Source: Basidiobolus meristosporus CBS 931.73
Lineage: Eukaryota > Fungi > Basidiobolomycota
DNA: 64,000 nucleotides
Assembly (NCBI GenBank): GCA_002104905.1
Contig: MCFE01000088.1
Coordinates: 62,001-126,000, forward strand
Direction: 5' to 3'
Shown here: positions 3,501 through 62,685 of the stretch, in pieces
Layout: each line of letters opens with the position of its first letter
Numbering within the stretch: the stretch's first letter is position 1
Position numbers and translations under genes: made by a program
Notes under the pieces: model-generated
The model's database searches: none
Seen by the model: only the letters and a program-made list of their open reading frames with translations
What the model was told of the DNA's origin: nothing

Positions 3501-5040
3501 AATGGGCTTTGGGCCAGCATTAGTATGCTAATAAAGTGTCTTTAGAATAGCAGAAACTAACAAAGGCGGAAGAACAAGGGTGCCATGGCTAAAAACCAGC
3601 AGCTTCCTCAATAGCCTATTACAAGCAGGGCCAAAAGCTCCTAACAAGCATTAAAGAGACATCAGGTAGCTGGAAGAATGCCAATTTGGGACAAGCAGGT
3701 AGACACAGATACATCAGCACAACATTTATCAAGGAAAAAGCGTAGTACCACTCAAGAAGCACCCAGTCAAAGTAGCAGTGAAGGACTTGGCAGTGATAAA
3801 GACTAGCCGCGTTTACAGGAGCCTGTCACAACTATGGTTGCAAGCTCACAACAAGCAGAAAAGAAATATCAGGTTGCCAGGAGGGTGCCAGCAAGAGACA
3901 AGCAAGCCATAACAGATGCATCAGAGCAGAATTTATCAGGGAGAAAATATAGTTCATCACAAAAAGCACTGAGACAAAGCAGCAGTGAAGAACCTTACAG
4001 CAATTAAGGAAAAGGTAAAGGGAGAAATGTGTACCCAAACCTGAGACAAGGAGGCGTGCAGGAAAAGCAGCAGTTCTTGCCAATTGACGCCGCAAGCCAG
4101 GAACAGACTGAGTCCCATCATAGCCAAGAAGAATTACCAACAAGAAAACAGCTGCTTTCACAAGTGTTGGAAGCACAGCTAGTTGAACTACACTCCAGTA
4201 TGGTAGATGAGTTTGAATAAAATGGCAATATTTCTCCCACAGCCTCCACATCCTTCTATGTTGACAGAGTGGAGATCCCACTGACAAACAAGGCTATGGC
4301 ATCAAGAACTCAAAAGACTATCACAATCCCTTCTGTGGAATTTTGGAACATTAATAGGCACACCAAGAGGTTGCAGCACTTCTCTAAGAGCAGTGCTCAA
4401 GAAAATACTCAAATAATGCAAGGATTTATTGCAAAGACTGGCAGATGATGTGCTAGACCTTGCAGTTCCAGCTGAAGAACAGGACTTGTGGGAACCAGTA
4501 AATGAACAGAGGCATAAATCCATTGGGTTCCCACCAAAGTTGTGGAACCAGAGCGTTACAGCAGAGATTCTTATTAAGTGGTGGATTTCAATGGAGTTAT
4601 TTGTTGAGTGTGGGGTTGGGCTTAATGTTAGTGTAGGGTATAGGGTCTTGTACAGGTCAATACAATTGGCTATTAAGGTATAACTGAAGTCTCAACAAAA
4701 ATAAATTGACAAGTATGCATGAAAAGTAAGTGAAACAGTTGAGTCAGGAAGTAAGGAGTGTTAATAAGAGGCAATAGCCAATCAATGCACACAAACAGAG
4801 GAGGTGATAGTGTGTCCAGGATCAGAAAGTGAGCAAATTGGTAGGGAGCCAATCAAAAGCCACCTGTACATTGTTATGATGAAAAATTTTGACCAACTTT
4901 TTTGTGAAATCCAAGGTGAAATTATTTTTCAACAGTCTCTGGATGGTGTCCTGCTGGGATCAGTACCTCTTAGTCACATGACTTTAATTCTTTGACAGCC
5001 TTTTGATGGGAGTGTCAGGCAGTATAATATTGGTCCTGAA
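551..5040. mobile_element. Older, more decayed and left-truncated copy of the CMC/CACTA-type element (transposase part on -, ORF2 on +), with a non-alignable segment at about 1060-1870
   Basis: 551-1010 aligns to about 24600-25010 and about 1900-5010 aligns to about 25060-28400; ORF fragments MPPKNKAKLSGSQ (2879) and MYPNLRQGG (4029) match ORF2 of the full copy. Confidence 0.85.
1487..1740. mobile_element. Possible solo LTR of a further family
   Basis: Starts TGATCACAG and ends CTGTGTAACA (imperfect terminal inverted repeat, TG..CA); no TSD found. Confidence 0.3.
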
Positions 5041-13100: not shown

Positions 13101-14275
13101 TAGTCATTGATCTTCATTCTTACTGGCTGGGTAATACGGTTGATTATGTGGGAGTTCCCATCAGCGGTGGAGACTGAAGTTGATTTGGTAGGTTCCGAGT
13201 TGATTCCAGCTTTCAAAGCAAATTGCTCTGACATGTACTCATGCAATGCTCCTGAGTCAATCATGATCTTGGCAGGTACTCCATTGATTGCTCCATTCAG
13301 GTACAATAACTTCCCTGAGTTTGAAGTCATTTGGGACAAGTACTCTTCTGTCATATGGAAGGTGAGTTCCGAGTCTTCTTCAAGCTCATCTTCCTCATTA
13401 TTGTGTTCATGGGACTCAATATGGTTGAAGGTTCTTGTTGGCTGGTGTCCATTTCTTCTCTGAGGGCAGTACTTTGCAATATGTCCCTGCTGGTGGCAAT
13501 TGAAGCAAAGTCCTCTCTTCTTGCATTCTTCTGAGGAGGGATTCTTCTGCATAGCGTCTATTTCCATTGGTACTGCTTCTGATTGTCTTCTTTCATAATG
13601 ATTATAGCCTTTCTGACTAGTCACTGTAGGCTTCCCAACTCCAAACATAGCTGAGTCATAGTCAATGGCAATCTTGATGGCTTCTTCAATAGTCTGAGGT
13701 CTTCGGTAATTGACTTCCTTGCGAGTTCTTTCTTTCAACCCATCAATAAAGTATTCAACTTGATCCAAGGGGTCCATTCTTTCAATTTGTCCAAGTAGAC
13801 ACCTGTACTCATAGATGTATTCTTGCACCATTCCTTTCTGTCTGAGTGTCTTTAACTTCCTTCTTAGTAGTGTCTGCTGGTGTGGAGGTTCAAAAGCATC
13901 CTGAATTTCCGACACAAACTCATCCCAGGTAGAGATTGTAGAGCATCCCATCATAGTAGCTGACCTGATCTTGTTGTGGTACCACTGTAAAGCTGCATCT
14001 GCCAGGTAAGAAGCTGCATAATGCAACTTGCTCTCTGGAGCAATTCCTTTAGCTTTAAAAGCTTCTTCAATCTGAAAGAGCCAAGTTCCCAGGTTTTCAT
14101 TGACTCTGCCATGGTACCGGTTGACCTTCACACTAAAGTTGCTCTTGACAGGGCTTTGCTGGCTCTGAGCCATGGTAGTCATTCCTTGTTGCTGTTGGCT
14201 GAGGATCTGGAGTAGCTGTTGCTGTTGGGCCAGGATTTGCTGCATGGCATTCTTCCATTCTTGATTGTCCGACAT
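10142..14275 (-). CDS. Gag-Pol polyprotein, 1377 aa, single frame, no chromodomain
   Basis: Gag, zinc knuckle [14 protein letters not shown], protease IDSGA, RT YLDD, RNase [13 protein letters not shown], integrase HHCC and D,D35E core, C-terminal WTGPF motif; RT-RH-IN order is gypsy. Confidence 0.98.
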
Positions 14276-26018: not shown

Positions 26019-28096
26019 ATGCCACCAAAAAATAAAGCAAAGTTGTCTGCTTCTCAACCAAGCCCCACCGCTGATGGCAACAGAAGATCAGTTGGACAAC
26101 AGCTTGCTTTGACATTCAGTGCAACAAGCAGGGCTACATCCAAAAAAGGCCCTGTGGACAATGTGCCCATTGAAGGTAATAATGCGGACTCCTCAGGCTC
26201 TTAGTCAAGTAGGCAATTGAGAACCTCCGCGGAGCTACAAGCTGACCGTTATGCTCAGGCAGATGAGAATGTAGTAAATGCAGTACCCTTTGTTGAAGAT
26301 CAGCAAGTGGCCATGATAACATCACCACCACCCATATTAGCAAGTATGTTGTCAGCTAATACCAAAGCATTAATAAAGCAATTAGGTGCAGTGACTGATA
26401 GGATAGATGCAATGGCCCAGAGAAATCAGGAAGTATTCCAGAAACAGAATGAGCGGATAATATTTGTAGAACAATCAATATCCCAGGTATAGAAAGCAGA
26501 ATCTTTGCTGCAAAGAAGGCACTCAATTAGCTCAATGTCACAGCCAAGAATTGAGCCATTTCCTGATGTAACAGCAGAGGAACACTGTACAGTCTTTGAA
26601 GCATAACAACAGTGCCCAAAGATAAAGCCCACAGAGAAACCTTTCACAGCATGGGAGGGAGAAAATGTGGTGTTAATACCAAAGCCTAAAATCAAAAGAC
26701 ATTGAAGATCTGTGAAGCCATTGAGTGCAATAATGCAGAATGGGCTGATATACAAGAGGCCTTCAGAAGTCTAGCACGCCATCACCTTAAGGCTGGCATA
26801 CCATGGGACCATCAGGAACTCAAGGCCAAGCAGAATGCACTTGACTTGTTCCATGAGCATTATCCTAGAATCAAATGGGCAAGCAGATTTTGGGCCAGCA
26901 TTGGTATGCTAAGAAAGTATCTTAAGAATAGCAGAAACTATCAAAGGCAGAAAAACAAGGGTGCCATGGATAAAAACCAGTGGCTTCCTCAAGAGCCTGT
27001 TACAAGCAGGGCCAAATGCTCCTGAAAAGTGTCAAAGAGTTGTCAGGCAGCTGCAAGAGTGCCAACTAAGGACAAGCAGGCAGATATGGATACACCAGCA
27101 CAACATTTATCAAGGAAAAAGCGTAGTACCACTCAAGAAGCACCCAGTCAAAGTAGCAGTGAAGGACCTGGCAGTGATAAAGACCAGCTGCGTTTACAGG
27201 AGCCTGTCACAACTACGGTTGAGAGCTCAAAGCAAGCTGAAAAGAAATGTCAGGTTGCCAGAAGAGTGCCAGCAAGGGATAAGCAGTCCAACACATATGA
27301 GTCAGAGCGGAATTTATCCAGGAGAGAACATAGTTCTTTACAAGAAGCACTCAGACAAAGTAGCAATGAAAGACCTGGCAGTGATAAAGGAAAAGGTAAA
27401 GGGAAAAATGTCTACCCAAGCCTGAGACAGGGAGGCATGCAAAAAAAACTGCAGTTCTGGCCAATTAACGCCGCAAGCCAGGAACAGACTGAATTTCATC
27501 ATAGCCATGAAGAATTACCAACAAGAAAACAGCTATTTTCACAAGAGTTGGAAGCGCAACCAGTTGAGCTACACTCCAGCAAGGTAGATGAGTTTGCTGA
27601 AAAAGACAATTTGTCTACCACAGCCTCCACATCCTCCACAGCCTCCATTGTTAACAGAGTGGAGATCCCACTGACAGACAAGGCTACAATGTCAAGAGCT
27701 CAAAAGACTATCACAATGCCTTCAGTGGAGTTTTGGAACATTAATAGGCACACCAGGAGGTTGCAGCACTTCTTCAAGAGCAGTGCTCAAGAAAATGCAC
27801 TGGAATATTGCAAGGATTTATTGCAAAGACTGGCAGATGAGGAGCTAGACCTTGCAGTGCCAGCTGAAGACCTGGATGTGTGGGAACCAGTGAATGAACA
27901 GTGGCATAAAGCCATTGGGTTCCCGCCAAAGTTGTGGAACCAGAGCGTCACAGCAGAAATACTTATTGAGTGGTGGATTTTAATGGAGTTACTTGTTGAG
28001 TGTGGGGTTGGGCCTAATGTTAGTGTAGGGTATAGAGACTTGTATAGGTCAATACAATTGGCCATTGAGGTACAACTGAAGTTTCAATGGAAATAA
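26019..28096 (+). pseudogene. Second ORF of the CMC element, uncharacterised, about 690 codons with a few stops and a frameshift
   Basis: Chained ORFs 26019, 26217, 26702, 27029; conserved in the copy at 2879-4700; helical blocks EWADIQEAFRSLARHHL..YPRIKWASRFWASIGML and LQRLADEELDL..PPKLWNQ. Confidence 0.75.
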
Positions 28097-31900: not shown

Positions 31901-33611
31901 TACTCTCAGACAAAAGGACTTGACTATACTGAGACCTCTGCACCGGTAGCCAAGTTCAATTCCATCAGATTAATATTGGCTATTGCAGCCAAATATAAGC
32001 TTTTTATTCATCAAATGGATGTAAAAACTGCATTTTTAATGGAGAACCTGCTGAGGACATGTATATGGACCAGCCTGATGGGTGTGTTGACCAAGATAAC
32101 CCCAATTTGGTTTGCAAGCTTAAAAAGTCACTATATGGTCTCAAACAATCACCAAGAGCCTGGAATTGCAAGATAGATTCTTATTTGGAATCTTTGAGTT
32201 TCAAAAGGAGTAATGCTGACTATAGTATATACTATAAGCCAGATAGAGCAAATCCAGTTCTATTAGCTCTATATGTGGATGATCTTATTATAGCCGCCAA
32301 TACCCTAGAAACATTGGAAGAGACAAAATCCAGCCTATCTAAGGAGCTCAAGATGTCTAATCTAGGAGAACTCAGTTACTACTTAGGGATTAAGTTCTCC
32401 ATAGACAGAAGTACCCAGACTATTACCCTAAGCCAATCCAAGTATATTCAAGATATACTAAAGAAGTACAAAATGGAAGACTGTAAACCGGCAGCTACCC
32501 CAATGGAGACAAACCTTTACTTGGTCAAAACTCAACCAAATCATGAGAGCTTGGTGCCATCTGAAAGCCCTGACTTTCCTTATCAATCTATGGTTGGCAG
32601 TCTGATGTATATTATGCTTGGAACATGTCCAGATATCTCATATTCAGTGGGAGTTGTCAACCAACATAATCCCAACTATGGATCTGATCATATTGCAGCA
32701 GTTAAGCGGATTTTTAGATACCTAAAAGGAACTGCTGATATCTGCTTAATATACACTTATAAGGACTCAGAACAGGATCTTGTGGGATACTCTGATGCTG
32801 ATTGGGGACAAAATCTGGAAGACAGAAGATCCACCACAGGATACACCTTTCTTTACTGTAAAGGAGCAATTTCATTTTTTTAAAGAAAGCAACCAACCAT
32901 AGCACTTTCTACCACAGAGGCAGAGTACATGGCAGCCTGTGAAGCTACAAAAGAAGCAATGTGGTTAAGAAAGCTTTTTACAGATTTAGGCCTATGTCAA
33001 AAAACGCCTATTACTTTATTTCAGGATAATAAAGGATGTATACAATTAGGTAGAAATCCAACTATTCATGCTAGAGCCAAGCACATAGATATTAATATCA
33101 TTTCTTACATGAAGCTATAGAGAATAACTTAGTTAGCTTAGTTTACTGTCCTACAGATGAAATGATTGCAGACATATTTACCAAACCATTAGCTAGAGAC
33201 AAGTTTGAATATCTTAGGTCAAAATTAGGACTAGTCAGTGTGAACATTTAGCTGAGTGGGAGTGTTGTAAGAATTTGTATTTCCACCTAAATATTTGCCT
33301 AACTTAGTCACTTAGATCATTACCTTCATATCCTAGAGAATACAGACCAAATTCCTTGTTGGGACTTACTTCAAATATTTTCACCAAAATACCAGGTACC
33401 CAGAACATGAAAATTTGATAAGTTGTCCAAACAGCCCCAAACTTTGCACACATGTTCTTGGGACCTTTCTTAACCTATTCTTTGTGTGTGTAATGCCAAG
33501 ACCAGGTAAAAGTATAAATACTACTTTTACATTCAATAAATCATTAAGTGAAGACCACATAATCTACTTGTTCTCCCAATCACTTCCGATATCTCCAAGA
33601 CTCTTACAACA
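28933..33611 (+). mobile_element. Full-length decayed Ty1/copia element, 4679 bp; 349-bp LTRs (28933-29281, 33263-33611); TSD GTTTT/GCTTT
   Basis: LTRs differ at about 20 of 349 positions by eye; PPT GAGTGGGAG before the 3' LTR; PBS-like TGTTATGAGCGC at 29282. Confidence 0.95.
29313..33255 (+). pseudogene. Copia gag-protease-integrase-RT-RNase H polyprotein with multiple stops and frameshifts
   Basis: KLDGSNYQVWKVKM, CNYCKRKGY, WYIGSGA, LWHRRFGH, SDHGGEY, PQQNGVAE, LYVDD, GYSDADWG, ARAKHIDI; IN before RT is copia order. Confidence 0.95.
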
Positions 33612-43118: not shown

Positions 43119-43309
43119 GCAAACATGCTTTACATAGAAGTAGGCCAGAATGATCTACACAGCATCAATGTTTCATCCCTGGAGTAGCCGATCCTCCCTG
43201 AATTTTCGATCACACGTCCAAGTATCCTCATATACCTCGAAGGAACAAGATACATTGTCCCAATAAATGAAAATAGATTTGATGTTTGTTTTGAAAATTG
43301 ATATGTGGG

Positions 43310-43429
43310 TAGCCTCTTGTGAGGCCGAAGAAAAATTGGCGAAGCTCCATTGAATGTTCCCCCTCCACGGAAATCTTTAGTAAAAGGCGAAAGATTTATC
43401 CGACTAAATGAAGAGGGAACTGGAGCGAT
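43310..43429 (-). ncRNA. U5: U5 spliceosomal snRNA, copy 1 (120 nt)
   Basis: AAATCTTTCGCCTTTTACTAAAGATTTCCGTGGAG is the U5 stem-loop 1 core with invariant loop GCCUUUUAC; long stem I, U-rich Sm site, 3' hairpin GCCTC-ACAA-GAGGC. Confidence 0.97.
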
Positions 43430-43635
43430 GAAGAAAGCCTTCATTACTAGTTGAAATTTATTAGTGATGAGAAAATGCAGCAATTATGGGATTGATTTTG
43501 TTGGTAGCATATCTCGGAGTCTCTAACAAATCGATCAGTGATGCATATTTTTGATTTCCTGAGGGTCAATTAATCCCACAATCTTTATGGCAGCTCAAGG
43601 TGTATAAATCCGGCCGAATCAATCGTGGAATAGTT
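43430..43635. promoter_or_regulatory. Shared 206-bp divergent promoter of U5 copies 1 and 2
   Basis: TCCCACAAT at 43574 and TATAAA at 43603 for copy 2; on the minus strand TCCCATAAT from 43491 and AATAAA from 43462 for copy 1. Confidence 0.75.
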
Positions 43636-43755
43636 ATCGCTCCAGTTCCCTCTTCATTTAGTCGGATAAATCTTTCGCCTTTTACTAAAGATTTCCGTGG
43701 AGGGGGAACATTCAATGGAGCTTCGCCAATTTTTCTTCGGCCTCACAAGAGGCTA
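43636..43755 (+). ncRNA. U5: U5 spliceosomal snRNA, copy 2 (120 nt), identical to copy 1 by eye
   Basis: Same U5 motifs as copy 1. Confidence 0.97.
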
Positions 43756-44231
43756 TTTACCACATCAAATTTCAAACAAATACAAAATATATTTCATGAG
43801 TCGGAAATAAGCCAATTATTCCTTTAAGGTTTGTTAGGATATATTTCAAAAGCCTCAGGATACATCCAATGATATTGAATGCCTTCTGTATCTCAAATAC
43901 AATCAGGGCGAAGGAAAGGGACACTTTTCTTGCACACATTTGAGGAATACGTGAATGCCTTTGTAGCAACTGGCATTTCTTCTAGACACTTAGGTTTTTG
44001 GTACGTAAACTTGATCGGCTAACGATTTTTGGAGATTTAAACAAGAATCATAACTCAAACGATGTTGAATGTTCCCTGTATCTCAAATACAACGGGTGTA
44101 CAAATAGGATTCTTGCATATATTCGACTATTGTTGATGCAAAAAAGTTGTATTCACATCTGCCTTTAGGTTTTGACACGTAGGCAGTGCCTTGTATGGGT
44201 GGATAAACGGTTTGAAGATTGATATGGTAGA

Positions 44232-44351
44232 TAGCCTCTTGTGAGGCCGAAGAAAAATTGGCGAAGCTCCATTGAATGTTCCCCCTCCACGGAAATCTTT
44301 AGTAAAAGGCGAAAGATTTATCCGACTAGATGAAGAGGAAACTGGAGCGAT
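44232..44351 (-). ncRNA. U5: U5 spliceosomal snRNA, copy 3 (120 nt), two substitutions in the 5' arm
   Basis: Same U5 motifs; ccagtttcctcttcatctagt versus ccagttccctcttcatttagt. Confidence 0.97.
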
Positions 44352-44378
44352 GTATCATCGTGATTCATAAATTGGGTT

Positions 44379-44414
44379 TTTATTCTCAGCGTGTAGTTCG
44401 GGATATTTATGGGA
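44379..44414 (-). promoter_or_regulatory. Promoter motifs of U5 copy 3
   Basis: Minus-strand TCCCATAAA from 44414 (-63) and AATAAA from 44384 (-33). Confidence 0.7.
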
Positions 44415-46539: not shown

Positions 46540-49500
46540 ATGGCCTCATCGTTAGCATTACAACTTCAGGGTATTCGAACCGTCGATAACCCCCTAGGAA
46601 ATGACAACTTCACCTCCAAATTCAAGGCTTCCTTCCTTTTTGACTCTAGACAAGCCGCCGATTATGATTTGGAAACCATCTTTTCTTTGGGAGTGAACGG
46701 CCTCGCTGAGCTCAAGCAGCTCAACAGCCATTTCGCTCAATTTGAGAAGACCCTTTTTTCGGAAGCAATCAAGAACGTGGACAGGGTCTTGCAGACCAAA
46801 GAGGAGAACGAAAAGCTGGACGCCAGTATCCTCGCCTTCATGCAGCAACTGTCCCCCTACTTCTTGTTGAAGCCGGCCGGGAAAGTGCTCGAATGGTTGA
46901 TTCGCAGATTCAGAATCAACGAATTCAACATTGACGCCATCATGACCTGTATCCTTCCCTATCATGAGACGAAGCCCTTTGTGACCATGGCCACGATCCT
47001 TCGAATCCCAGACGATAGCCAGTGGACCTTCATTCGCCCTATCCGCAAGACTGCCCAACCCCTTGAACGCACACAACTTGTTGCTCAATGTATTAAAGAG
47101 AAGTCGCTTTTAGATTTTGTATGTAACATGATTCTCAACTCGGCCAACAAGAAGATCGCATTCAAAAGCTTGGTCTCATTCTATGCATCAACCATGATGG
47201 AGATAATCGAAACCCTTCCCACCATCTCCGACAGCTTCTTGTTAAACATCATGCCCTTCATATTCGATGGCATTCGCGCCAAGAACTCTCCAGAGTTCCA
47301 GCTAGCCAGTTACATGATCATAAGTCAGATCTCCGCCCGTGCGGTTCTTTCCAGCGAGACCTGCGATGGGATCCTTTCCGCAATGACCCAGCATTACTCG
47401 GATGCTCGTGGCGTTTTGTTGTGCGTTATTCAGCTCTTCCAGTCTCAGGAGGAGCTCGTCGATATTCCCGAAAGAGCCTTCAAGCACATCGCCAAGATCG
47501 CCGAATTGAACGAATTGCTCGCCGACGTCTGCTCGAAGTATGCGTCCAACAAGTTCCTCTACCCCTTCCTTCTCAACCTCATCAAGCACAGTGGCCAGCA
47601 CGAGAACTACGACAAAGTATTGAACAGCGTGCTCAAGCAGGAGAAGTTGCCTAGCACCATGGTTCAGAGTCTTTGCGAGAGTATCTTGGATTTGTTTTTG
47701 GAAAGCAAGCTATCCTCCGGCAACTCGGAGGACTTTTGCGCCAAGATGCGCGAGTTACTTCAAATTCTCCAAATCAAGTATTCCGAAGATATCGATACTT
47801 CCTTGGAGAGCAAGCTTAGAGTTGTTAGCCAAGACAAGTCCTCAGCCGGGAAGAAAACCCAGCAATTGCTCTACGAGTTCATCGCCCAAACTTTCAAGGG
47901 AACTCGTCACGAGCCGATTCAAGAATCAAACACCACTTTGTATCTCAGTTTGAATCATGCCGACACCAGCATCCGTCTCATTGCGTTGCAGAAACTGAAG
48001 TCTTTAGTCGAGGATGGATCCAGCTCTGCATTCGAGGACATCTTGGAGCAGACTTTATTGGCACGCTTGGGAGATGATGTCGACCAAATTTCTGCTTTCG
48101 TGATCGCCTTCCCAGGCCTTGAGAAGCTTGTTTCCGGAGAGAAGCTCCTGGTGCAAATCGAGAAGCTTTTGGATTCCGAGGATATCTCCCGCAAGACCAA
48201 GATCGCCTCCCTGGACTTCCTTACTGGAGCTTTCTTGGAAGCCAACCCCTCTCTGGAGAACCTGGTCATTCCTATCATTCTGTCCAACTGTGTAGCAACC
48301 AAGAGAACATGGAAGTCTTCCCTACACTTGCTCAGAACCATTCCCAAGTCCAAGCTGGCTTCATCCCCATTGTTTGCTCGTTTCTCCACTTTCGATCGCA
48401 AGACTCTTGAGGAGATCGAGGCATGCGAGGACAAGGAAAAGAAGCTCCTTGGATTGGTCGACCTTGATATTCAACTGGTCAAGCTGGTCGCCGACAATCT
48501 TGTCAGCAATATCGATGCTCAGGAGCTATTCATCAAGGCATTCAGCTCTCAGCGCTCCATGTGGGAGTTGTTCGCCACTTTGGTCTTGAACAGAGCCATC
48601 TATCTGTTGGACGAGAAGAAATCCATCAGCATTATCAGCACCATTCTTCCTCACATCCTGGAGAAATTGAATGAGCTAAGAAACACCCAGCAGCTCTCGG
48701 CCAAGGACTTCATTGCTTCCTCCGAGGGACTACCCTCTGAGGCCCATATCAACGATATCGCCAGAAAGGGCACCAAGTTCAACAAGATCCACAATGTTCT
48801 CTTCTCATTGGTCAACATTGTCTCTTGTCTCAAGGTGAAGGAGATGGGATCCATCCCATGGCTCGCACCCGTGGACAGCGTATCGACCACCATCAAGCAA
48901 TACAAGGAGATCCTGGTGAAGCTCTATATCACCTTTACCTCCGGTCAAAGCATCGGTTGCTTCGAGAAAATGGTTCGTGGTCTTTTCGAGCATCACCTTC
49001 AAGATGACCCGATCGAGTTTTTGAGCTCCTTCTGGACTGAGGATGAGGCTGAATCGTCTGCCTTGGTCCAAATGAGAAGCTTGCATATCGCCAATGCATA
49101 CTTCCTTGCTCACGCGGACCCATCCACTCCAGCATACACTGACTTCCAGCTTGTGATCCCCTCCTTGTTGATCACCATCTTGCATCCTAGCAAGGTTGTT
49201 AGACACGCTGGATTGTCTTGCCTTTCCTCCATCGACAAAGCATACGAGAAGTTGATGGGCAGTATGTCGAACCTCAAGTCTATCAAGGCAGAGAGCATCT
49301 ACAAATACGACAGCTTCTATGGCAGTAGCTCCGATCAGTTGCAATATCTCCTGGTCGAGAACATCTTCGAGTTCTTGAGGGCCGTTGAAGCCAGCAAGGA
49401 GGAGTTCCTTGCTGATCCTCAGTATATCGAGAAGTTCTTGGGTGATTATTTGACCAAGGACTCGAAAGAATCCAAGAAGCAGGCCAGCATGAAAGAGAGC

Positions 49501-52500
49501 ATCTTGGCCTTCCTATTGTCCCACGTCATTTCATTCCGCAAGCCAGTTGCCCAAATCAAGCTTCTGCGAATCCTTTCTCAGGTCAACTCGCCCAACAAGG
49601 TGAAGATGCTTCTTCCTTTGATGGACAGCCTGCTTCAGTCGGTCGTCGCTGCTGAGGATACCATCAAATCGGATGACCATATCCTTCAGCTGATGCAGCT
49701 ATGCATCCGCTGCTTCACCCCAGCCACCGCCTCCTTGTTGGATAGCAAGAGCTCCAAGTATTTGAAGATGTTCATTTCTCTTCTAAACACCAGTGGTGGT
49801 GATGAGGATATCACCTCCATTCAAGAGATGACCTTGGCCCAAATCACCCCCGAGCTCTTCGCTAATCTCAGCGCCACCAAGAAGTATGAGATCTTCTCAC
49901 ATCTTATCAGCCTTGCCTCGGAAGCCTCTACTACGGTAGTCAAACTCGTCAAGGAGGTTCTCAAGAGCATTTCCTTCGATGCATCCCTGGTTTCCCAAGA
50001 GTTTGCCTATCTTCACCAAGAGTTGATCAAGCAGAAGGATAGCCAACCTAAGCGCGCTCGTGAGAACGACGCCGAGAAGCAGCCAATTCTTGTGCCCCTG
50101 TACAACCTTATCACCACATTGGAGCTTTTGGAATACAAGCCCAGCATTGACAAGGAGATCAGCCTTATCTCCCCCTTGTTCGAGATGCTCTCCGTGGTCT
50201 TGAACCTTGAACTCGGAGATACCCCAGTGTCAGTTGATTACATCAATCAGCTCATACTCTCCTCCTTGACACGACTAGTGCGTTCTGCTGATGAGAAACG
50301 CGTCACTATCGAAGAGAACATCCTCCGTGTGGACCTCGTCGTACAGTGCATTCGTGTGACCGCCAATCCACAAACTCACAATCAGTCATTGCTTCTTATG
50401 GCTGCTATTGCTGCCTTGTATCCCGATCGTGTCCTTCACAACATCATGCCGGTCTTCACCTTCATGGGAGCGAACGTTCTTCGCCAAGACGACAACTATA
50501 GTTTCCATGTGATCCAACAGACTTTGGAGAAGATTCTTCCTCCATTGGTTGCTTCCCATCGCCAAGCCAGCGAATCCAACCAGAAGCTGCTTCTTGCCGT
50601 CAAGCCCATCATGAGCGTGTTTGTTGATGCACTCTTCCATATCCCCAAGCATAGAAGATTGAGACTGTTCACCGTCCTCGTCTCCACCTTGGGTGAGGGC
50701 GAGTTCCTTTACGCCATTCTCTCCTTGCTTTTGGAGAAATACACCGAGAAGGTCTTGAAGGGCAACTCGGCCGAAGCCGACTCTCTCATGGAGTTCTGCC
50801 TGATCGTCTCCAACCAGTTCTCTCCTCAAACCCAGATGAACTCGCTCGCTTCTTTGATGAAGGCCTTGTTGGTGTTGCCCAATGAGAAATCCACCGACGA
50901 GGAAAACGTTGATGACACTCTCTTCGACATCGAGCAGCATTCCAACAAACATCTTCGTCAATTCAAGTTCGCCTCCCTCTCGTTCGCCGGTAAACTCCTT
51001 AGCAACAAGGCGTTCTTGTCCAAGATTCTCACTCTGCAGGACGACAACCAGTTGGAGCAGTACTTCCTCTCGATCTCCGAGTTGCTTCTCTCCATTGTCA
51101 CCAACGTCACCACCTTCGTGGGCCAGAAGACTGGAGACTCCGTCGAGAAGTTCTGGAAGGGTCTCCTCAAGGTCACTTACGATGTTTTGGATAAGGTGAA
51201 CAACCTTCTTCCATTGCCATCATTCTTGAACATCGTATCCCAATTATTGAACCACGAGCACAGCACCATTCGTCGCAAGTCTATGTTGTTGCTCAGTGAG
51301 AAGGTTGCCAACTATTCGGAATGCACCGATGCCGAGGAGGCCGCCTTTGTTGAGATGGTGCCCCGTCTGGCTGCCGTTGTGGAGTCTGCCGGCCAATCTA
51401 CCGAGCAAGACGCAGTCATCAAGCAGACCGCTCTGTTGACCATTTCTGCTTTGCTTCGTCGCTTTGCTCAGAAGAACCCCAATCCCTTCGTGGAGATTCT
51501 GCCGGTTGTCATCGGTGATAGTGGCTTGAGCCACTCCAATATGCAGGTCTCCGCCTCCAGCCTTGTCTGCCTCACATACTTCTGTCAAGAGTTGGGTCCT
51601 AGAGTGATTCCTCAGTTCCCCAAGTTCATGCCAGTCATTCTCAATATCCTGGAATCTTGCTTCGGCGAGAAGGAACTCTCAGCCAATACACGTCTCCTGG
51701 TCCAATTGAGCGCTTTCAGTTCACTGGAAACCATTGTCAAGACCCTTCCTCAATTCCTCAGCCCCTACGTCCAAAGAATGCTGGCCTGCGCGCTTCAGCC
51801 TTCGTTGAGCCATTTCGAGGAAGACGATAAGGAGAGAAAGGTGTTCGGAAAGGCCCAAAGCCTCTTGTCTGAGATGGCCGCCAAGGTCCCCACCCGTATC
51901 CTGCTCCCTCAAGTGTATCAGTATCAGGGATTGGCAGTCAAGAATGGAACAAACTCGCTCATTCCTCTTTACACTGTATTGGAGACCGCCATTTCCAGCA
52001 TGAACCGCGCAAACATCTCCACTCACTACAAGAGCATCTTCAAGTTCTTCCTGATCTCGTTCGATTTCCGTCGTCAACACGGAAGCGAGTTCACTGCTGA
52101 GGAGGTCGACCGGGTCGAGAGCAAGGTCATTGAATCCTTCCTTCAATTGGTCATGAAGTTGAACGAAACCCTGTTCAAGCCTCTATTCTTGAAGACCTTG
52201 GACTGGGCCACCACCGAGCTTGCACAAAAGGACGACAACTCCAGACTCATCTTCTTCTACAAGCTTCTGGACACCTTGCTGGAGAAATTGAAGTCCATCA
52301 TCAGCCCCTACTACGTGTACGTTCTGGATCATACTATCGCCAAGTTGGAGGCATACAAATCCGAGCAGAAGAGCACCGACTCTCTTTGGGTGTTCATGAT
52401 CGACTCTCTCCACAAGTGCTTCTTGTATGACAACGACAACTTCTGGTCGGGCGATGTATTCAACAAGGTCCTTCAACCCTTGGTTGACCAAATGGATAAC

Positions 52501-52850
52501 GTCAATGGAGGCGCTGCTCTCTATCATCAACACATTGATCAGCACTTGGTCCTTGTCTTGGCCAATTAGCTGTCACGGCCAGCAACGAGGCACTCTGGAA
52601 GCCACTGAACCACGAGGTGTTGCTCAAGTCCCGTAACGATCAAATGGAGATCCGACTCGCATCCCTCCTCACCCTTCAAGACTTCTACTCCCGTCTGGGT
52701 GAGGAGTTCCTTGTGCTGTTGCCCGAAACCATTCCCTTCCTTGCGGAACTTATGGAGGATGACGAGCAGAAGGTGGAGAAACTCACCCAGGAAGTGATCG
52801 CCCAGATCGAGCAATATTTGGGAGAATCTCTCCAGAAATACTTCCACTAA
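46540..52850 (+). CDS. UTP10: U3 snoRNP/SSU processome HEAT-repeat protein Utp10 (HEATR1), intronless, with a one-base deletion at about 52551
   Basis: N-terminal SLALQL..ASFLFD..AADYD, LSPYFLLKPAGKVLEWLIRRF, RVDLVVQCIRVTANPQTHNQSLLL, BP28-CT KLNETLFKPLF, C-terminal LGEEFLVLLPETIPFLAELMEDD in the shifted frame. Confidence 0.96.
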
Positions 52851-56223: not shown

Positions 56224-57912
56224 TTAGCAATTGCGGGGATTACGGGCACACCACAAGGGTTGCAAGGGCTCAGCACCAATGCCACGATCAACCAAACGAG
56301 CTCTTTGCTCGTGGATACGTGGGAACACGTCACCAGTCTTGCGAATAGTGCCGTCAGCAAGCTTGATGTCGGACCAGAGGACTTCGGCGGCCGCAGCGCC
56401 ACGAGGCCACAAGACACGATCAAGGTTGATGCCATCGATTTGCTCCGCCCAGAGGCCTACCTCACCGCCAAGGACAAGCTTTGACTGTTCCTTGGTCATG
56501 TTGGCAGTGAGGTCATAGTTGTAAACAACCTGCCAGCCCTTGTAAGGATCACACCATGAGTTGCCTTGGCTGTCACTGATCCAGGCACCACGGCCACAGT
56601 CAAGATACCATCTCTCGTAGCTGGTGGAGATCACTCGATGGCCAGCACCCACTACCTTCAAGGCATCGGCAGCACCGAGCCATACTTGGACGGCAACATC
56701 CTTCTGCATGGGGATGTGGTGGCTGGTCAAGGCCTCTTGCCAGGTGATTGGAGTCTTCTTGTTCTCACGGACCCAGTTGTGAGACTTGAGGACGAATTTC
56801 TCAAAGACGCTGTCAAGGGTGACGTTGTTCTTCTGGAGGTACTCGGGGTAGCCAGGAGAGGTCTCCCAGCACTTGAAGTTCACCTCATCACCACCGATGT
56901 GGACGAACTCGTCGTCGAACCAGGTGGTCACTTCCTTGAGGAAGTTGCGAACAATGACATCGGTCTTGGGGTTGATGATGTTCAATTGACCACTGTTGGG
57001 TTCAGCAGCGTATTCAGACCAGTTGGGCTGGATATTCATGCAAGTGACAATGTCAGGGAAGGCAAGACCCCAGGAGTAAGCATGGCCTGGAATATCGAAC
57101 TCGGGGTAGACTCTGATGCCGCGGTCCTTGGCATAGCTGACAATGTCACGGACATCCTTCTCGGTGTACACCCAGCGCTTGCTGTAGGCTCCCTTCTCGG
57201 CCAACTCAGGGTAGGTCTTGGTCTTGAGGGGGAAGCTGTGCTGATCGATGATGTGCCAGTGGAGAACGTTGAGCTTGTTGTATGACATGCCATCGAGGGT
57301 GCGCTTGATGTCGGCAACCTTGAGGAAGTTGCGAGAAGTGTCGATCATCACACCACGATGGGGGAACACTGGCTTGTCAGTGATCGACACTGGGGCCAAT
57401 GGGATGCGGAACTGGTTGGTCTCCTCAGTCCAGCTGACAAGCTGCGAGAATGACTCGAGACCACGAAGGGCACCATACACACTCTTGGCCGTGATGGTGG
57501 CCTGACCACCCTTGGCTGGGACATTCAAGGTGTATGACTCATCGGTGTCGAGGTTGAGCTTGGTGTTGCCACCGCTGACTTGAATGCTGAGACGATTCAA
57601 CAAGGGGTACTTGCCCTTGGGTGCGAGGGCGTGAGTAGGAACAGAGGTGGTAGGAGTGGGGAAGACAGTCTTGGCAACAGGGTTGAGGAGAGCACCATAC
57701 TCACCCTTGGTGAAGATCAACTTCTTGTAGCGGCGGACAGCTCTCTCAAGGATATCTTTGCCAGCACCGGCCTTGATGGAGACATCGAGTTCGTGATTGC
57801 TCAGACGGACGATGTTCTTGCCAATGTCCATCTTCTCGGGCAAGGGCCAGACCCAAGCCATGGAGGTGGCGGCCAACAGCGAGATAGAGGTAAGGAGTTT
57901 GATAGCAACCAT
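56224..57912 (-). CDS. GH20 beta-N-acetylhexosaminidase, copy A, 562 aa, secreted, intronless
   Basis: Signal peptide then WVWPLP; [29 protein letters not shown], catalytic HIGGDEV, YLDCG, GGEVGLWAE, LWPRGAAAAEVLWS, QPLWC. Confidence 0.97.
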   Translation of the reverse strand: MVAIKLLTSISLLAATSMAWVWPLPEKMDIGKNIVRLSNHELDVSIKAGAGKDILERAVRRYKKLIFTKGEYGALLNPVAKTVFPTPTTSVPTHALAPKGKYPLLNRLSIQVSGGNTKLNLDTDESYTLNVPAKGGQATITAKSVYGALRGLESFSQLVSWTEETNQFRIPLAPVSITDKPVFPHRGVMIDTSRNFLKVADIKRTLDGMSYNKLNVLHWHIIDQHSFPLKTKTYPELAEKGAYSKRWVYTEKDVRDIVSYAKDRGIRVYPEFDIPGHAYSWGLAFPDIVTCMNIQPNWSEYAAEPNSGQLNIINPKTDVIVRNFLKEVTTWFDDEFVHIGGDEVNFKCWETSPGYPEYLQKNNVTLDSVFEKFVLKSHNWVRENKKTPITWQEALTSHHIPMQKDVAVQVWLGAADALKVVGAGHRVISTSYERWYLDCGRGAWISDSQGNSWCDPYKGWQVVYNYDLTANMTKEQSKLVLGGEVGLWAEQIDGINLDRVLWPRGAAAAEVLWSDIKLADGTIRKTGDVFPRIHEQRARLVDRGIGAEPLQPLWCARNPRNC

Positions 57913-58318
57913 TGATTAAGATTAACAGGTGAATACGGACTCTATTGCTGAATCGCCAAGCTGCTTCGGACGGCTTTATACTTTTTCTTGAGTGGCATCC
58001 TTCATAGAGATGAATACACATGGGCTGCAAGTGTAACACAAAACCCGAGTGAATACATTACGTTCTTAAAATGTTCAAATTGAGCTGCCATGAGAATATC
58101 GAGCTTACCAAAGTAGAAATGTGTGACGATGGACAATTGGCTCAATTGAAGGGTTGACTAGATGGGGTTCCGTGGAAGTGTTTGTTAAACTTGGTAGACT
58201 GAGGTCTCAAAGAAATATCAGCGCCTACTTTATTAAGGATTCCGGGGGAAATCACTTTATTCATGAGTTCGTCACGAAAATCTATCATCCTTTGGTGACT
58301 AATGTATGGGGGGGGGAA

Positions 58319-60007
58319 TCAGCAATTTCTTGGGTTGCGAGCACACCACAGCGGTTGCATGGGCTCAGCACCAATGCCACGATCAACCAAACGAGCTCTT
58401 TGCTCGTGGATACGTGGGAACACATCGCCAGTCTTGCGAATAGTGCCATCAGCAAGCTTAATGTCGGACCAGAGGACTTCGGCGGCCGCAGCGCCACGAG
58501 GCCACAAGACACGATCAAGGTTGATCCCATCAATTTGCTCTCCCCACACTCCAACCTCTCCACCAAGTACGAGCTTGGCCTCATCCTTAGTCATGTTGGC
58601 GGTGAGGTCGTAGTTGTACACGATCTGCCAGCTCTTATACGGATCGCACCATGATTTATCCTGGTTGTCACTTATCCAGGCACCATGACCACAGTCGAGA
58701 TACCATCTTTCATGACCAATAGAAATTACGTGATGACCAGTGCGGACTATCTTCACCGCATCAGCAGCACTTAGCCACACTTGAACATGAACATCCTTCC
58801 TCATAGGAATATGATGGCTAGTCAACGCTTCTTGCCAGGTGATAGGAACTTTGTTGTTCTCACGAACCCATTGATGAGCTTTCAAAACGAATTGCTCAAG
58901 AAGGTTGTCGATGGTGACGTTGTTCTTCTGGAGGTACTCGGGGTATCCAGGAGAGGTCTCCCAGCACTTGAAGTTCACCTCATCGCCACCGATGTGGACG
59001 AACTCGTCGTCGAACCAGGTGGTCACTTCCTTGAGGAAGTTGCGAACAATGACATCGGTCTTGGGATTGATGATGTTCAATTGACCACTAGATGGTGCGG
59101 CCGAATGTGCAGCCCAGTTAGGTTGGATATTCATGCATGAAACAATGTCAGGGAAGCAAGACCCCAAGAGTAGGCATGGCCTGGAATATCGAACTCGGGA
59201 ATAACTCTGATGCCACGGTCCTTGGCATAGCTGACAATGTCGCGGACATCCTTCTCGGTGTACACCCAGCGCTTGCTGTAGGCTCCCTTCTCGGCCAACT
59301 CAGGGTAGGTCTTAGTCTTGAGGGGGAAGCTGTGCTGATCGATGATGTGCCAGTGGAGAACGTTGAGCTTGTTGTATGACATGCCAGTCGAGGGTGCGCT
59401 TGATGTCGGCAACCTTGAGGAAGTTACGAGATGTGTCAATTAACACTCCACGATGAGCAAACGCTGGCTTGTCAGTGATTGAAACGGGGGCAAATGGGAT
59501 GCGGAACTGATCGGTCTCCTCAGTCCAGCTAACAAGCTGCGAGAATGACTCGAGACCACGAAGGGCACCATACACACTCTTGGCCGTGATGGTGGCCTGA
59601 CCACCCTTGGCTGGGACATTCAAGGTGTATGACTCATCGGTGTCGAGGTTGAGCTTGGTGTTGCCGCCACTGACTTGGATGTCAAGGTGAGTCAACAATG
59701 GATACTTGTCCTTGGGTGCGAGGGCATGAGTAGGAACAGAGGTGGTAGGAGTGGGGAAGATAGTCTGGACAACAGGGTTAAGAAGAGCGCCATACTCGCC
59801 CTTAGTAAAGACTAACTTCTTGTAACGACTGATAGCTCTCTCAAGGATATCTTTTCCAGCATCAGCTCTGATGGAGAAATCGAATTCTTGACTGCTCAAG
59901 CAGACGATGTTCTTGCCAATATCCATCTTCTCAGGCAAGGGCCAAACCCAAGCCATTGAGGTGACGGCCAAAAGTGAGATGGAAGTAAGGAGTTTAGTGA
60001 CTACCAT
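58319..60007 (-). pseudogene. GH20 copy B, most divergent; +1 (about 59387) and -1 (about 59156) frameshifts as assembled
   Basis: Colinear with copy A; atgccagtcg versus atgccatcg and gggaagcaag versus gggaaggcaag; may be intact if these are assembly errors. Confidence 0.8.
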
Positions 60008-60994
60008 ATGTTAAAACTCTATTAAGGAATATGTCATGTTTTATTGCTTTTAATTTATACTCGGCTGTTTGCCGAAGACCACTCCATATATATCGGGGTT
60101 TCGGATGCATGATTGAGAGTTACCGTGCAGTCACCAGAACTTGATCTTACCATGACTTAACTATTCAATTCACTTGAGATGTTAATATCAAACGCCCCTC
60201 GTCCACTGCTATGTCAAGACAATAATCTGCAAGGCAAACCTAATCTTCGATACGGATTTGTTGTGTATCGAAGTTTACTGCTGATTGCCAGCGATCAAGT
60301 ACATGAATAGGATTCTGGCAACCTATAAACGCATCGAAAATGTCGCATTGCATGGAGATCCTTAACCTGAAAATGACCGGATATGTACAGGGTATGCACA
60401 GAGTGTGGGTACTGTGTATTATGCATCAACACTCCAGAAGTGTGAAATAACGAGAAGGGACTTATCCATTCCAAATTTAGCGGAAAATGGAATGCTGATC
60501 CAGGACCTGATACAAGGAATTTCATCAAGTTATCTTTAGATTACCTTACCACTGAAATCCGGACCCAAGAATCATTCTCAAAAATAGCGATTCTCCGAGC
60601 TGGACTAATGACCAAAGCAATCATGTGGTTTTTCTTGTGGGAGGTATGAAATTTCATTAGGCAGAATATGGAAATCCGCACGGGAAACAATCGATAATTA
60701 GTCCAACGGACCTATCCTATAGCTGGGTGATTTACGACGACTAGTCAAACAGGTGTACAACCCATGAAAGTATATCCTTGCTAAACTCAGCTCCCTAAAT
60801 TAGGTCCCAGCTCAAAAAACCCGGAAATACAAGACGCTTTATGAATACGAATCAATATATCGATTTATTAGGTCAAAATTGGTAGATCAAATGCCATACT
60901 TCTAGATGGCGAAATCAAAATACTGGAACACATTCTTCACGACATCGGTAAAAAAAACGCCCATTAAGTGGGTTGCAATTTCGAGTGCTCAAAA

Positions 60995-62685
60995 TTAGCA
61001 ATTGCGAGGGTTGCGAGCACACCACAATGGCTGCAAGGGCTCAGCTCCAATGCCACGATCAACCAAACGCGCTCTTTGCTCGTGGATACGTGGGAACACA
61101 TCGCCAGTCTTGCGAATAGTGCCATCAGCAAGCTTGATGTCCGACCAGAGGACTTCGGCGGCAGCAGCGCCACGAGGCCACAAGACACGATCAAGATTAA
61201 TGCCATCGATTGCTTCGGCCCAGAGACCAACCTCACCACCGAGGACAAGCTTTGACTGTTCCTTGGTCATGTTTGCGGTGAGGTCGTAGTTGTACACAAC
61301 CTGCCAGCCCTTGTAAGGATCGCACCATGAGTTGCCTTGGCTGTCACTGATCCAGGCACCACGACCACAGTCAAGATACCATCTCTCGTAGCTGGTGGAG
61401 ATCACTCGATTTCCTGCCTCAACTACCTTGATGGCATCAGCGGCACCAAGCCATACTTGGACGGCAACATCCTTTCCGATGGGGATGTGGTGGCTGGTCA
61501 AGGCCTCTTGCCAGGTGATTGGAGTCTTCTTGTTCTCACGGACCCAGTTGTGAGACTTGAGGACGAATTGTCCAAAGAGGTTGTCAAGGGTGACGTTGTT
61601 CTTCTGGAGGTACTCGGGGTAGCCAGGAGAGTCCTCCCAGCACTTGAAGTTCACCTCATCACCACCGATGTGGACGAATTCATCGTCGAACCAGGTGGTC
61701 ACTTCCTTGAGGAAGTTACGAACAATGACATCGGTCTTGGGGTTGATGATGTTCAATTGACCACTGTTGGGCTCAGCAGCATAGTCAGACCAGTTGGGCT
61801 GCATGTTCATGCAAGTGACAATGTCAGGGAAGGCAAGACCCCAAGAGTAGGCATGGCCTGGAATATCGAACTCGGGATAGACTCTGATGCCGCGGTCCTT
61901 GGCATAGCTGACAATGTCACGGACATCCTTCTCGGTGTACACCCAGTGCTTGCTGTAGGCTCCCTTCTCGGCCAACTGAGGATAGGTCTTGGTCTTGAGG
62001 GGGAAGCTGTGCTGATCGATGATGTGCCAGTGGAGAACGTTGAGCTTGTTGTATGACATGCCGTCGAGGGTGCGCTTGATGTCGGCAACCTTGAGGAAGT
62101 TGCGAGAAGTGTCGATCATCACACCACGATGGGGGAACACTGGCTTGTCAGTGATCGACACTGGGGCCAATGGGATGCGGAACTGGTTGGTCTCCTCAGT
62201 CCAGCTAACAAGCTGCGAGAATGACTCGAGACCACGAAGGGCACCATACACACTCTTGGCCGTGATGGTGGCCTGACCGCCCTTGGCTGGGACATTCAAG
62301 GTGTATGACTCATCGGTGTCGAGGTTGAGCTTGGTGTTGCCACCGCTGACTTGGATGTTGAGGTGAGTCAACAGTGGGTACTTGCCCTTGGGTGCGAGGG
62401 CGTGAGTAGGAACAGAGGTGGTAGGAGTGGGGAAGACAGGTCTTGGCAACAGGGTTGAGGAGAGCACCATACTCACCCTTGGTGAAGATCAACTTCTTGT
62501 AGCGGCGTACAGCTCTCTCAAGGATATCTTTGCCAGCACAGGCCTTGATGGAGACACCAAATTCGTGATTGCTCAGACGGACGATGTTCTTGCCAATATC
62601 CATCTTCTCAGGCAATGGCCAGACCCAAGCCATGGAGGTGGCGGCCAACAGTAGAGATAGAGGTAAGGAGTTTAATGGCAACCAT
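60995..62685 (-). pseudogene. GH20 copy C; two +1 frameshifts as assembled (about 62440 and 62652), otherwise nearly identical to copy A
   Basis: gaagacaggtc versus gaagacagtc and cagtagagatag versus cagcgagatag; ATG at 62685 matches the copy A start; may be intact if these are assembly errors. Confidence 0.75.

What the first reader, a model, noticed from the sequence alone, without database searches (positions are those of the whole stretch)
43430..44414. Position-fixed USE/PSE-like element plus TATA-like box upstream of all three U5 genes
Seen: the three upstream regions do not align, yet each has TCCCAYAA at -62 (43574, +), -62 (43491, -) and -63 (44414, -) and WATAAA at exactly -33 (43603; 43462; 44384). 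Known: plant snRNA genes use a USE (RTCCCACATCG) plus TATA whose spacing selects Pol II or Pol III, and animal snRNA genes use a SNAPc-bound PSE; budding yeast lacks this system. Inference: this fungus keeps a dedicated SNAPc-type snRNA promoter with a plant-like two-element layout, which I do not recall being described in fungi.
Basis: partly seen in the sequence, partly recalled or inferred. Interest (0 to 1): 0.8.

Follow-up and report, generated by a model that had tools for sequence, protein, structure and literature searches.

The report
Conserved two-box promoter of fungal U5 genes
Three U5 spliceosomal RNA genes of the early-diverging fungus Basidiobolus meristosporus each carry the same two short promoter boxes at fixed distances, matching the snRNA promoter element known from plants, slime moulds and insects but, as far as the searchable literature shows, not yet described in fungi.

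Summary
Rfam finds three U5 genes. Each has TCCCAYAA starting at -62/-62/-63 and WATAAA at -33, counted from the A of ATCGCTCC. The composite occurs three times in 64 kb (0.07 expected), only at these genes.

The window is Basidiobolus meristosporus CBS 931.73. In B. ranarum the syntenic U5 genes carry TCCCACAA at -63 to -65 and an A/T box at -31 to -34. The rest of the flanks is at random identity (0.22-0.43).

The element matches the Dictyostelium DUSE ([AT]CCCA[AT]AA, about -63), the plant USE core (RTCCCACATCG) and the invariant 5' half of the Drosophila PSEA (ATTC-CAA).

Best reading: a gene-external Pol II snRNA promoter of the PSE/USE/DUSE kind plus a TATA-like box, probably read by a SNAPc homologue.

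Not tested: SNAPc genes, real 5' ends, and other snRNA classes. Other first-stage notes of this scan report the same element on U1 and U6 of this genome; I could not check them.

The plant Pol II spacing rule is not met: the boxes lie about three helical turns apart, not four.

Verdict: a real feature and a new member of a known kind, of moderate interest.

The parts
43310..43429 (-). U5 snRNA gene copy a (start taken as A of ATCGCTCC at 43429)
   Evidence: Rfam RF00020 88.4 bits over 43310-43427. Identical over 120 nt to copy b.
43636..43755 (+). U5 snRNA gene copy b, divergent from copy a across a 206-bp shared spacer
   Evidence: Rfam RF00020 88.4 bits over 43638-43755.
44232..44351 (-). 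U5 snRNA gene copy c (118/120 identical to a and b), 119 bp from the ATG of an AMP-binding enzyme gene
   Evidence: Rfam RF00020 87 bits; identity; Pfam AMP-binding for the ORF at 44470.
43484..43491 (-). PSE/USE/DUSE-like element TCCCATAA of copy a, starting at -62
43574..43581 (+). PSE/USE/DUSE-like element TCCCACAA of copy b, starting at -62
44407..44414 (-). PSE/USE/DUSE-like element TCCCATAA of copy c, starting at -63
43457..43462 (-). TATA-like box AATAAA of copy a, starting at -33
43603..43608 (+). TATA-like box TATAAA of copy b, starting at -33
44379..44384 (-). TATA-like box AATAAA of copy c, starting at -33
43286..43309 (-). Conserved 3' flank block of copy a (CCAYATCAAWYTTCAAAC type); possible 3'-end formation signal
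   Evidence: Alignments. Only the YAAAC(A)A part is kept in B. ranarum.
43760..43779 (+). Conserved 3' flank block of copy b
44208..44229 (-). Conserved 3' flank block of copy c

Best explanation
Each U5 gene has a compact promoter lying wholly upstream of the gene, made of two boxes. The first is an 8-9 bp element, TCCCAYAA(W), starting 62-65 bp before the start site. The second is an A/T-rich TATA-like box starting 31-34 bp before it. Initiation is inferred at the A of a pyrimidine-A step (C/T then ATCGCTCC). The upstream element is the fungal counterpart of the animal PSE, plant USE and Dictyostelium DUSE. It most likely is the conserved 5' half of a longer site bound by a SNAPc-type complex, through the Myb repeats of a SNAP190/SNAPC4 homologue. 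That complex, together with TBP on the TATA-like box, would recruit RNA polymerase II. Shown here: the boxes, their fixed positions, their conservation against a randomised background within and between two Basidiobolus species, and their match to published consensus elements. Inferred: the start site, Pol II, and above all the identity of the binding factor.
For: The three U5 genes are confirmed by Rfam. The boxes are at the stated coordinates and offsets. The composite motif occurs 3 times against 0.07 expected, only at U5 genes. The positional shuffle test gave 7/8 invariant columns against at most 5 in 300 shuffles. The window is identical to B. meristosporus CBS 931.73 contig MCFE01000088.1 over 26,311 nt. 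B. ranarum syntenic loci: L002 has a U5 gene next to the AMP-binding gene, with TCCCACAA at -65 and AATAAA at -34. L003 has a divergent U5 pair next to the orphan and Mito_carr genes, with TCCCACAA at -63 and TTTATAA at -33 to -27. In these two B. ranarum contigs (about 20 kb) the 8-mer occurs only three times, all at U5 promoters. Non-genic flanks show no blastn similarity between the species. Identity in register outside the boxes is 0.22-0.43, except for the recently duplicated L003 pair. Literature: DUSE is [AT]CCCA[AT]AA about 60-63 bp upstream of all spliceosomal RNA genes, both Pol II and Pol III. The plant USE is RTCCCACATCG with a TATA box at -28 to -30. ATTC-CAA is invariant in all 23 D. 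melanogaster PSEAs, the PSE centre lies about 50-55 bp upstream, and SNAP190 contacts the whole PSEA. SNAPc is said to exist in most eukaryotes. For Pol II: the genes contain internal T runs of 4 and 5-7, which would terminate Pol III.
Against: No SNAPc subunit was looked for, because no query sequence was available by reference. Only U5 genes were examined, so sharing with U1, U2, U4 and U6 rests on unchecked scan notes. Nothing is conserved in what would be the 3' half of a 20-bp PSE. A MEME and manual search in the mucoralean Lichtheimia found no PSE, TATA or Oct upstream of Pol III RNAs, so the system is not evidently general in early-diverging fungi. The box-to-box spacing differs from plant Pol II genes.
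Confidence: 0.65

Rival explanations
1. The boxes are a real U5 promoter, but the -62 element is read by a factor other than SNAPc, for example a lineage-specific Myb or telobox-type protein. Tbf1, which marks budding-yeast snoRNA promoters through ARCCCTAA-like sites, is an example (my own knowledge). The likeness to USE, DUSE and PSEA would then be convergent.
For: SNAPc presence is untested here. The element is short (8-9 bp), with no conserved 3' half. Mucorales showed no PSE. CCC-rich Myb-type sites are common (own knowledge).
Against: The same core occurs at the same distance in three other eukaryotic groups, and there it is tied to snRNA genes specifically. CCCAYAA is not the CCCTAA telomere-type site. 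The motif is not enriched elsewhere in the window.
Confidence: 0.2
2. The shared blocks are leftovers of the duplications that made the gene copies, or of gene-conversion tracts, and have no function.
For: The genes are paralogues, 118-120 of 120 nt identical. The two L003 promoters are 96% identical, so recent promoter duplication does happen.
Against: Neutral decay would not leave two sharp islands at fixed positions inside flanks that are at random identity. The same islands are kept in B. ranarum orthologues, where other non-coding DNA has lost all similarity. A conversion tract from the gene would have to skip -1 to -27 and -35 to -54.
Confidence: 0.03
3. The element belongs to a SNAPc-type system, but these genes are transcribed by Pol III, as the plant-like short box-to-box spacing might suggest.
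For: The start-to-start distance of 29-31 bp (a 21-23 bp gap) is nearer to plant Pol III than to plant Pol II genes.
Against: The genes contain T4 and T5-T7 runs, including the Sm site, which terminate Pol III. U5 is a Pol II product in every system studied (established knowledge). No T run follows the 3' stem directly.
Confidence: 0.05

Closest known systems
Dictyostelium upstream sequence element (DUSE)
   Same: The consensus [AT]CCCA[AT]AA lies about 60-63 bp upstream of the start of all spliceosomal RNA genes and other small RNAs, at both Pol II and Pol III genes. TCCCATAA of copies a and c fits that consensus exactly. The position is the same within 1-3 bp.
   Different: TCCCACAA (copy b and all B. 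ranarum copies) departs at one position from the consensus as printed. A TATA-like box at -33 accompanies the element here. The DUSE-binding factor is itself not identified in the papers read. The organisms are an amoebozoan and a fungus.
Plant snRNA promoter: USE (RTCCCACATCG) plus TATA box
   Same: A two-box layout with a TATA box near -30 in Pol II snRNA genes. The core TCCCACA is shared. B. ranarum L002 even reads TCCCACAAATCG.
   Different: The plant USE sits near -70, four helical turns from the TATA box in Pol II genes and one turn closer in Pol III genes. Here the element starts at -62 to -65, about three turns from the TATA-like box. The ATCG tail of the USE is not conserved. Spacing-based polymerase choice was not tested.
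Animal PSE / Drosophila PSEA bound by SNAPc
   Same: An element needed for snRNA gene transcription, centred about 50-55 bp upstream. Its 5' half is the conserved part, invariant ATTC-CAA in flies, which resembles (W)TCCCAYAA.
   Different: The animal elements are about 17-21 bp long, and their 3' half sets polymerase choice. No 3' half is conserved here. Vertebrate Pol II snRNA genes lack a TATA box, and flies use a PSEB. SNAPc binding is not shown here.
Dikarya snRNA promoters (S. cerevisiae; S. pombe U2 spUSE plus TATA)
   Same: Fungal Pol II snRNA genes with a TATA box.
   Different: Budding and fission yeast are regarded as lacking SNAPc (own knowledge). I could not retrieve the S. pombe element's sequence, so identity with TCCCAYAA is unknown.

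Membership tests
SNAPc-type (PSE/USE/DUSE) gene-external snRNA promoter | A short element at a fixed distance (about 50-70 bp) upstream of the snRNA start site, on the sense strand | tested here: met
   It starts at -62, -62 and -63 in the window, and at -63, -63 and -65 in B. ranarum. Chance is excluded.
SNAPc-type (PSE/USE/DUSE) gene-external snRNA promoter | Sequence of the element related to known PSE, USE or DUSE consensus | tested here: met
   TCCCAYAA compared with [AT]CCCA[AT]AA, RTCCCACATCG and ATTC-CAA. The comparison is with published consensus strings only.
SNAPc-type (PSE/USE/DUSE) gene-external snRNA promoter | [quoted passage not shown] | not tested
   Only U5 genes lie in the window and in the fetched loci. 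Scan notes s1-194702 and s1-197597 claim it for U1 and U6 but are unchecked.
SNAPc-type (PSE/USE/DUSE) gene-external snRNA promoter | Genome encodes SNAP190/SNAPC4, SNAP50/SNAPC3 and SNAP43/SNAPC1 homologues that bind the element | not testable with these tools
   No SNAPc sequence was available by reference to use as a query. None of the window's larger ORFs is one.
SNAPc-type (PSE/USE/DUSE) gene-external snRNA promoter | Element required for transcription; start site about 60 bp downstream | not testable with these tools
The start is inferred from the Rfam model start and the boundary of paralogue identity.
Plant-type USE + TATA promoter with a spacing code | TATA box near -30 in Pol II snRNA genes | tested here: met
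   WATAAA at -33/-34, or TTTATAA at -33 to -27, in all six promoters.
Plant-type USE + TATA promoter with a spacing code | USE about four helical turns from the TATA box in Pol II genes and one turn closer in Pol III genes | tested here: not met
   The start-to-start distance is 29-31 bp (a 21-23 bp gap) in these presumed Pol II genes, against the plant rule. The Pol III side was not examined.
Plant-type USE + TATA promoter with a spacing code | Full 11-bp consensus RTCCCACATCG | tested here: inconclusive
   The core TCCCA(C/T)A is kept. The flanking R and the ATCG tail are not conserved across the six promoters.

The most novel reading that the evidence does not exclude
TCCCAYAA at about -60 is the ancestral eukaryotic core of the SNAPc recognition site. 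It would be kept almost unchanged in plants (USE), Amoebozoa (DUSE), insects (5' half of the PSEA) and non-Dikarya fungi, and lost together with SNAPc on the way to Dikarya. Basidiobolus would then be a fungal system in which that loss, and the origin of yeast-type snRNA promoters, can be dated and dissected.
Probability: 0.45. Interest if true: 0.65.

Novelty: new member of a known kind. Interest (0 to 1): 0.5.

Why it matters
Knowledge of snRNA gene transcription in fungi comes almost wholly from budding and fission yeast, which are regarded as lacking SNAPc. The one early-diverging-fungus study I found reported no PSE. A clear, position-fixed PSE/USE/DUSE-type element in Basidiobolus would have three consequences.

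- It places the SNAPc-type promoter inside Fungi.
- It links the plant, amoebozoan and insect elements through one shared core, which argues for a very old origin.
- It gives a practical signature (TCCCAYAA, then 21-23 bp, then a TATA-like box, then about 27-33 bp to the start) for finding unannotated small RNA genes. It also offers candidate promoters for small-RNA or guide-RNA expression in these fungi.

It is an extension of a known system, not a new mechanism.

Tried and rejected
**Reads.** The look-up of sequencing runs found only DNA holders and no RNA run.

There was one exception, not of my choosing. The findings look-up by place ('relatives') padded my interval 43430-43635 by 1,500 nt on each side and so covered those places. 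It returned nothing.

**Metagenome scans.** The AMP-binding N-terminal exon found no relative. A 19-nt pattern from the U5 5' stem gave 75 hits, all chance matches without a U5 3' part or the promoter element.

**Literature.**
- Canzler 2016, Hinas 2006, Aspegren 2004 and the S. pombe U2 promoter paper are not held.
- Searches for SNAPc in early-diverging fungi gave nothing usable.

**SNAPc subunits.** There was no way to start a protein search without a sequence held by reference, and I did not type one from memory.

**Far-upstream enhancer.** No 6-mer is shared by the five independent promoters between -260 and -66.

**Other TCCCACAA sites in the window** (4486, 17729, 32780, 60635). None has a TATA-like box at the right spacing. 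The site at 4486-4493 and a 7-mer site at 27879-27885 sit in copies of one repeat.

**Rejected readings.** Chance and duplication leftovers (see the rival explanations).

Full report
**What is there.** Rfam places three U5 spliceosomal RNA genes at 43310-43427 (-), 43638-43755 (+) and 44232-44349 (-), each at 87-88 bits against a gathering score of 40.
- An alignment of the three genes with their flanks shows identity starting abruptly at ATCGCTCC, two bases before the Rfam model start and preceded by a pyrimidine.
- Copies a and b are identical over 120 nt. Copy c differs at two positions.
- Copies a and b are divergent and share a 206-bp spacer.
- Copy c lies 119 bp from the ATG of an AMP-binding enzyme gene, which is followed by UTP10/HEATR1.

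**The observation.**
- TCCCAYAA lies at 43484-43491 (-), 43574-43581 (+) and 44407-44414 (-).
- WATAAA lies at 43457-43462 (-), 43603-43608 (+) and 44379-44384 (-).
- The offsets are -62/-62/-63 and -33/-33/-33.
- Outside these two boxes the upstream regions are at random identity, 0.24-0.28 in register.
- The 8-mer alone is not enriched in the window: 7 sites against 5.6 expected.
- The composite TCCCAYAA-N16-28-WATAAA occurs three times against 0.07 expected. None of 100 shuffles reached three, and all three sites are the U5 promoters.
- The four other 8-mer sites have no TATA-like box at the right spacing. One of them, with a further 7-mer site, sits in copies of a repeat.
- A positional test on four promoters gave 7 of 8 invariant columns. 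In 300 shuffles the mode was 3 and the maximum 5.

**Organism and cross-species test.**
- A scan note named the genus. I confirmed it: the UTP10 ORF's best hits are B. ranarum (85%) and B. meristosporus.
- The window is identical over 26,311 nt to contig MCFE01000088.1 of B. meristosporus CBS 931.73.
- I fetched two B. ranarum contigs through neighbouring proteins.
- L002 carries one U5 gene upstream of the orthologous AMP-binding gene (tblastn hit, 61% identity), so it is the orthologue of copy c. It has TCCCACAA at -65 and AATAAA at -34.
- L003 carries the orthologues of the Mito_carr and orphan genes that lie to the left of the cluster. Beside them is a divergent U5 pair, each gene with TCCCACAA at -63 and TTTATAA at -33 to -27.
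- The U5 genes are 90% identical between the species.
- The non-genic flanks show no blastn similarity, and identity in register outside the boxes is 0.22-0.43.
- The two L003 promoters are 96% identical to each other, a recent inverted duplication, so they count once.
- That leaves five independent promoters, all with both boxes.
- In about 20 kb of B. ranarum sequence the 8-mer occurs only three times, each at a U5 promoter.
- This is a phylogenetic footprint. It disposes of chance and of duplication leftovers.

**What it resembles.**
- The Dictyostelium DUSE is printed as [AT]CCCA[AT]AA. It lies about 60-63 bp upstream of all spliceosomal RNA genes and many other small RNAs, and is associated with both Pol II and Pol III genes. 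TCCCATAA fits that consensus exactly; TCCCACAA fits at 7 of 8 positions.
- The plant USE is RTCCCACATCG near -70, with a TATA box at -28 to -30. Pol III genes have the USE one helical turn closer than the four turns of Pol II genes.
- In D. melanogaster the bases ATTC-CAA are invariant in all 23 PSEAs.
- Also in the fly work: the PSE is centred about 50-55 bp upstream, its 5' half is the conserved half, and SNAP190 contacts its whole length.
- The Basidiobolus element therefore has the sequence of the shared core and the position of the DUSE and of the PSEA 5' half.
- Its two-box layout with a TATA-like box in a Pol II gene is plant-like. The spacing is not: 29-31 bp start to start, about three turns.

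**Mechanism.** I infer a gene-external Pol II promoter. A SNAPc-type complex would sit on TCCCAYAA(W) and TBP on the A/T box, with initiation at the A about 33 bp downstream of the box.
- Pol II is supported by internal T4 and T5-T7 runs, which would stop Pol III, and by what is known of U5 elsewhere.
- The binding factor is the weak link. SNAPc is said to exist in most eukaryotes, but I could not search for its subunits because no query sequence was available by reference.
- A study of the mucoralean Lichtheimia found no PSE, TATA or Oct motifs upstream of Pol III RNAs.
- A different Myb-type factor remains a fair rival.

**What could not be done.**
- No RNA run holds the locus.
From then on I worked beside those places, with one exception. 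The findings look-up padded my interval by itself and covered them; it returned nothing.
- Other snRNA genes of this genome could not be fetched.
- First-stage notes of this scan report the same TCCCA element at about -62 on U1 and U6 (s1-197597, s1-194702) and an snRNA-type promoter on an unknown 179-nt RNA family (s1-212436). They agree with my reading, but they are unchecked and are not counted as evidence.
- Two metagenome scans found nothing useful.

**Verdict.** SNAPc dependence and a plant-like spacing code are not shown, and the plant Pol II spacing is not met. I rate it a new member of a known kind, of moderate interest.

Noticed in passing
window 43286-43309 (-), 43760-43779 (+), 44208-44229 (-); L002 downstream of the U5 gene: A conserved block of the type CCAYATCAAWYTTCAAAC starts a few bases after the U5 3' stem in all three paralogues. 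B. ranarum keeps only a CTAAACAAAC-like part. It may be a 3'-end formation signal (a 3' box), but it matches neither the plant nor the vertebrate consensus as I recall them.
   Followed up: partly
window 43530-43546: A quasi-palindrome, ATCGATCAGTGATGCAT, lies near the middle of the spacer shared by the divergent copies a and b. It is about -98 from copy b and -109 from copy a. It is not found at copy c or in B. ranarum.
   Followed up: partly
window 43860-44126: Two diverged tandem copies of a unit of about 190 bp lie in the spacer between copies b and c (43-nt core 79% identical, spacing 190; second block 82%, spacing 183). No Rfam family matches and there is no TCCCAYAA. Origin unknown.
   Followed up: partly
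window 46540-52569 (+): UTP10/HEATR1 is one uninterrupted 2009-aa ORF here. The public B. meristosporus model for the same DNA (K493DRAFT_312976) has only 1693 aa and lacks the U3snoRNP10 domain hit, while the B. ranarum protein has 2114 aa. The public gene model looks wrongly spliced or truncated.
   Followed up: partly
window 4486-4493 and 27879-27885 (-): Two of the stray TCCCACA sites sit in copies of one repeated sequence (shared CTTCAGCTGG.ACTGCAAGGTCTAGC), presumably a transposon.
   Followed up: no
window 10142-14275 (-); 32059-32883 (+): There is a full-length Ty3/gypsy polyprotein ORF of 1377 aa (gag, protease, RT, RNase H, integrase) and a copia-type RT fragment.
   Followed up: no
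window 56224-62476 (-): Three tandem family-20 beta-hexosaminidase genes. The middle one is split over two ORFs (58319-59167 and 59312-60007), by an intron or a frameshift.
   Followed up: no
L003 9582-9996: In B. ranarum the divergent U5 pair carries promoters that are 96% identical from about -65 to -1. This is a recent inverted duplication that took the promoter along and ends just upstream of the TCCCACAA element.
   Followed up: yes
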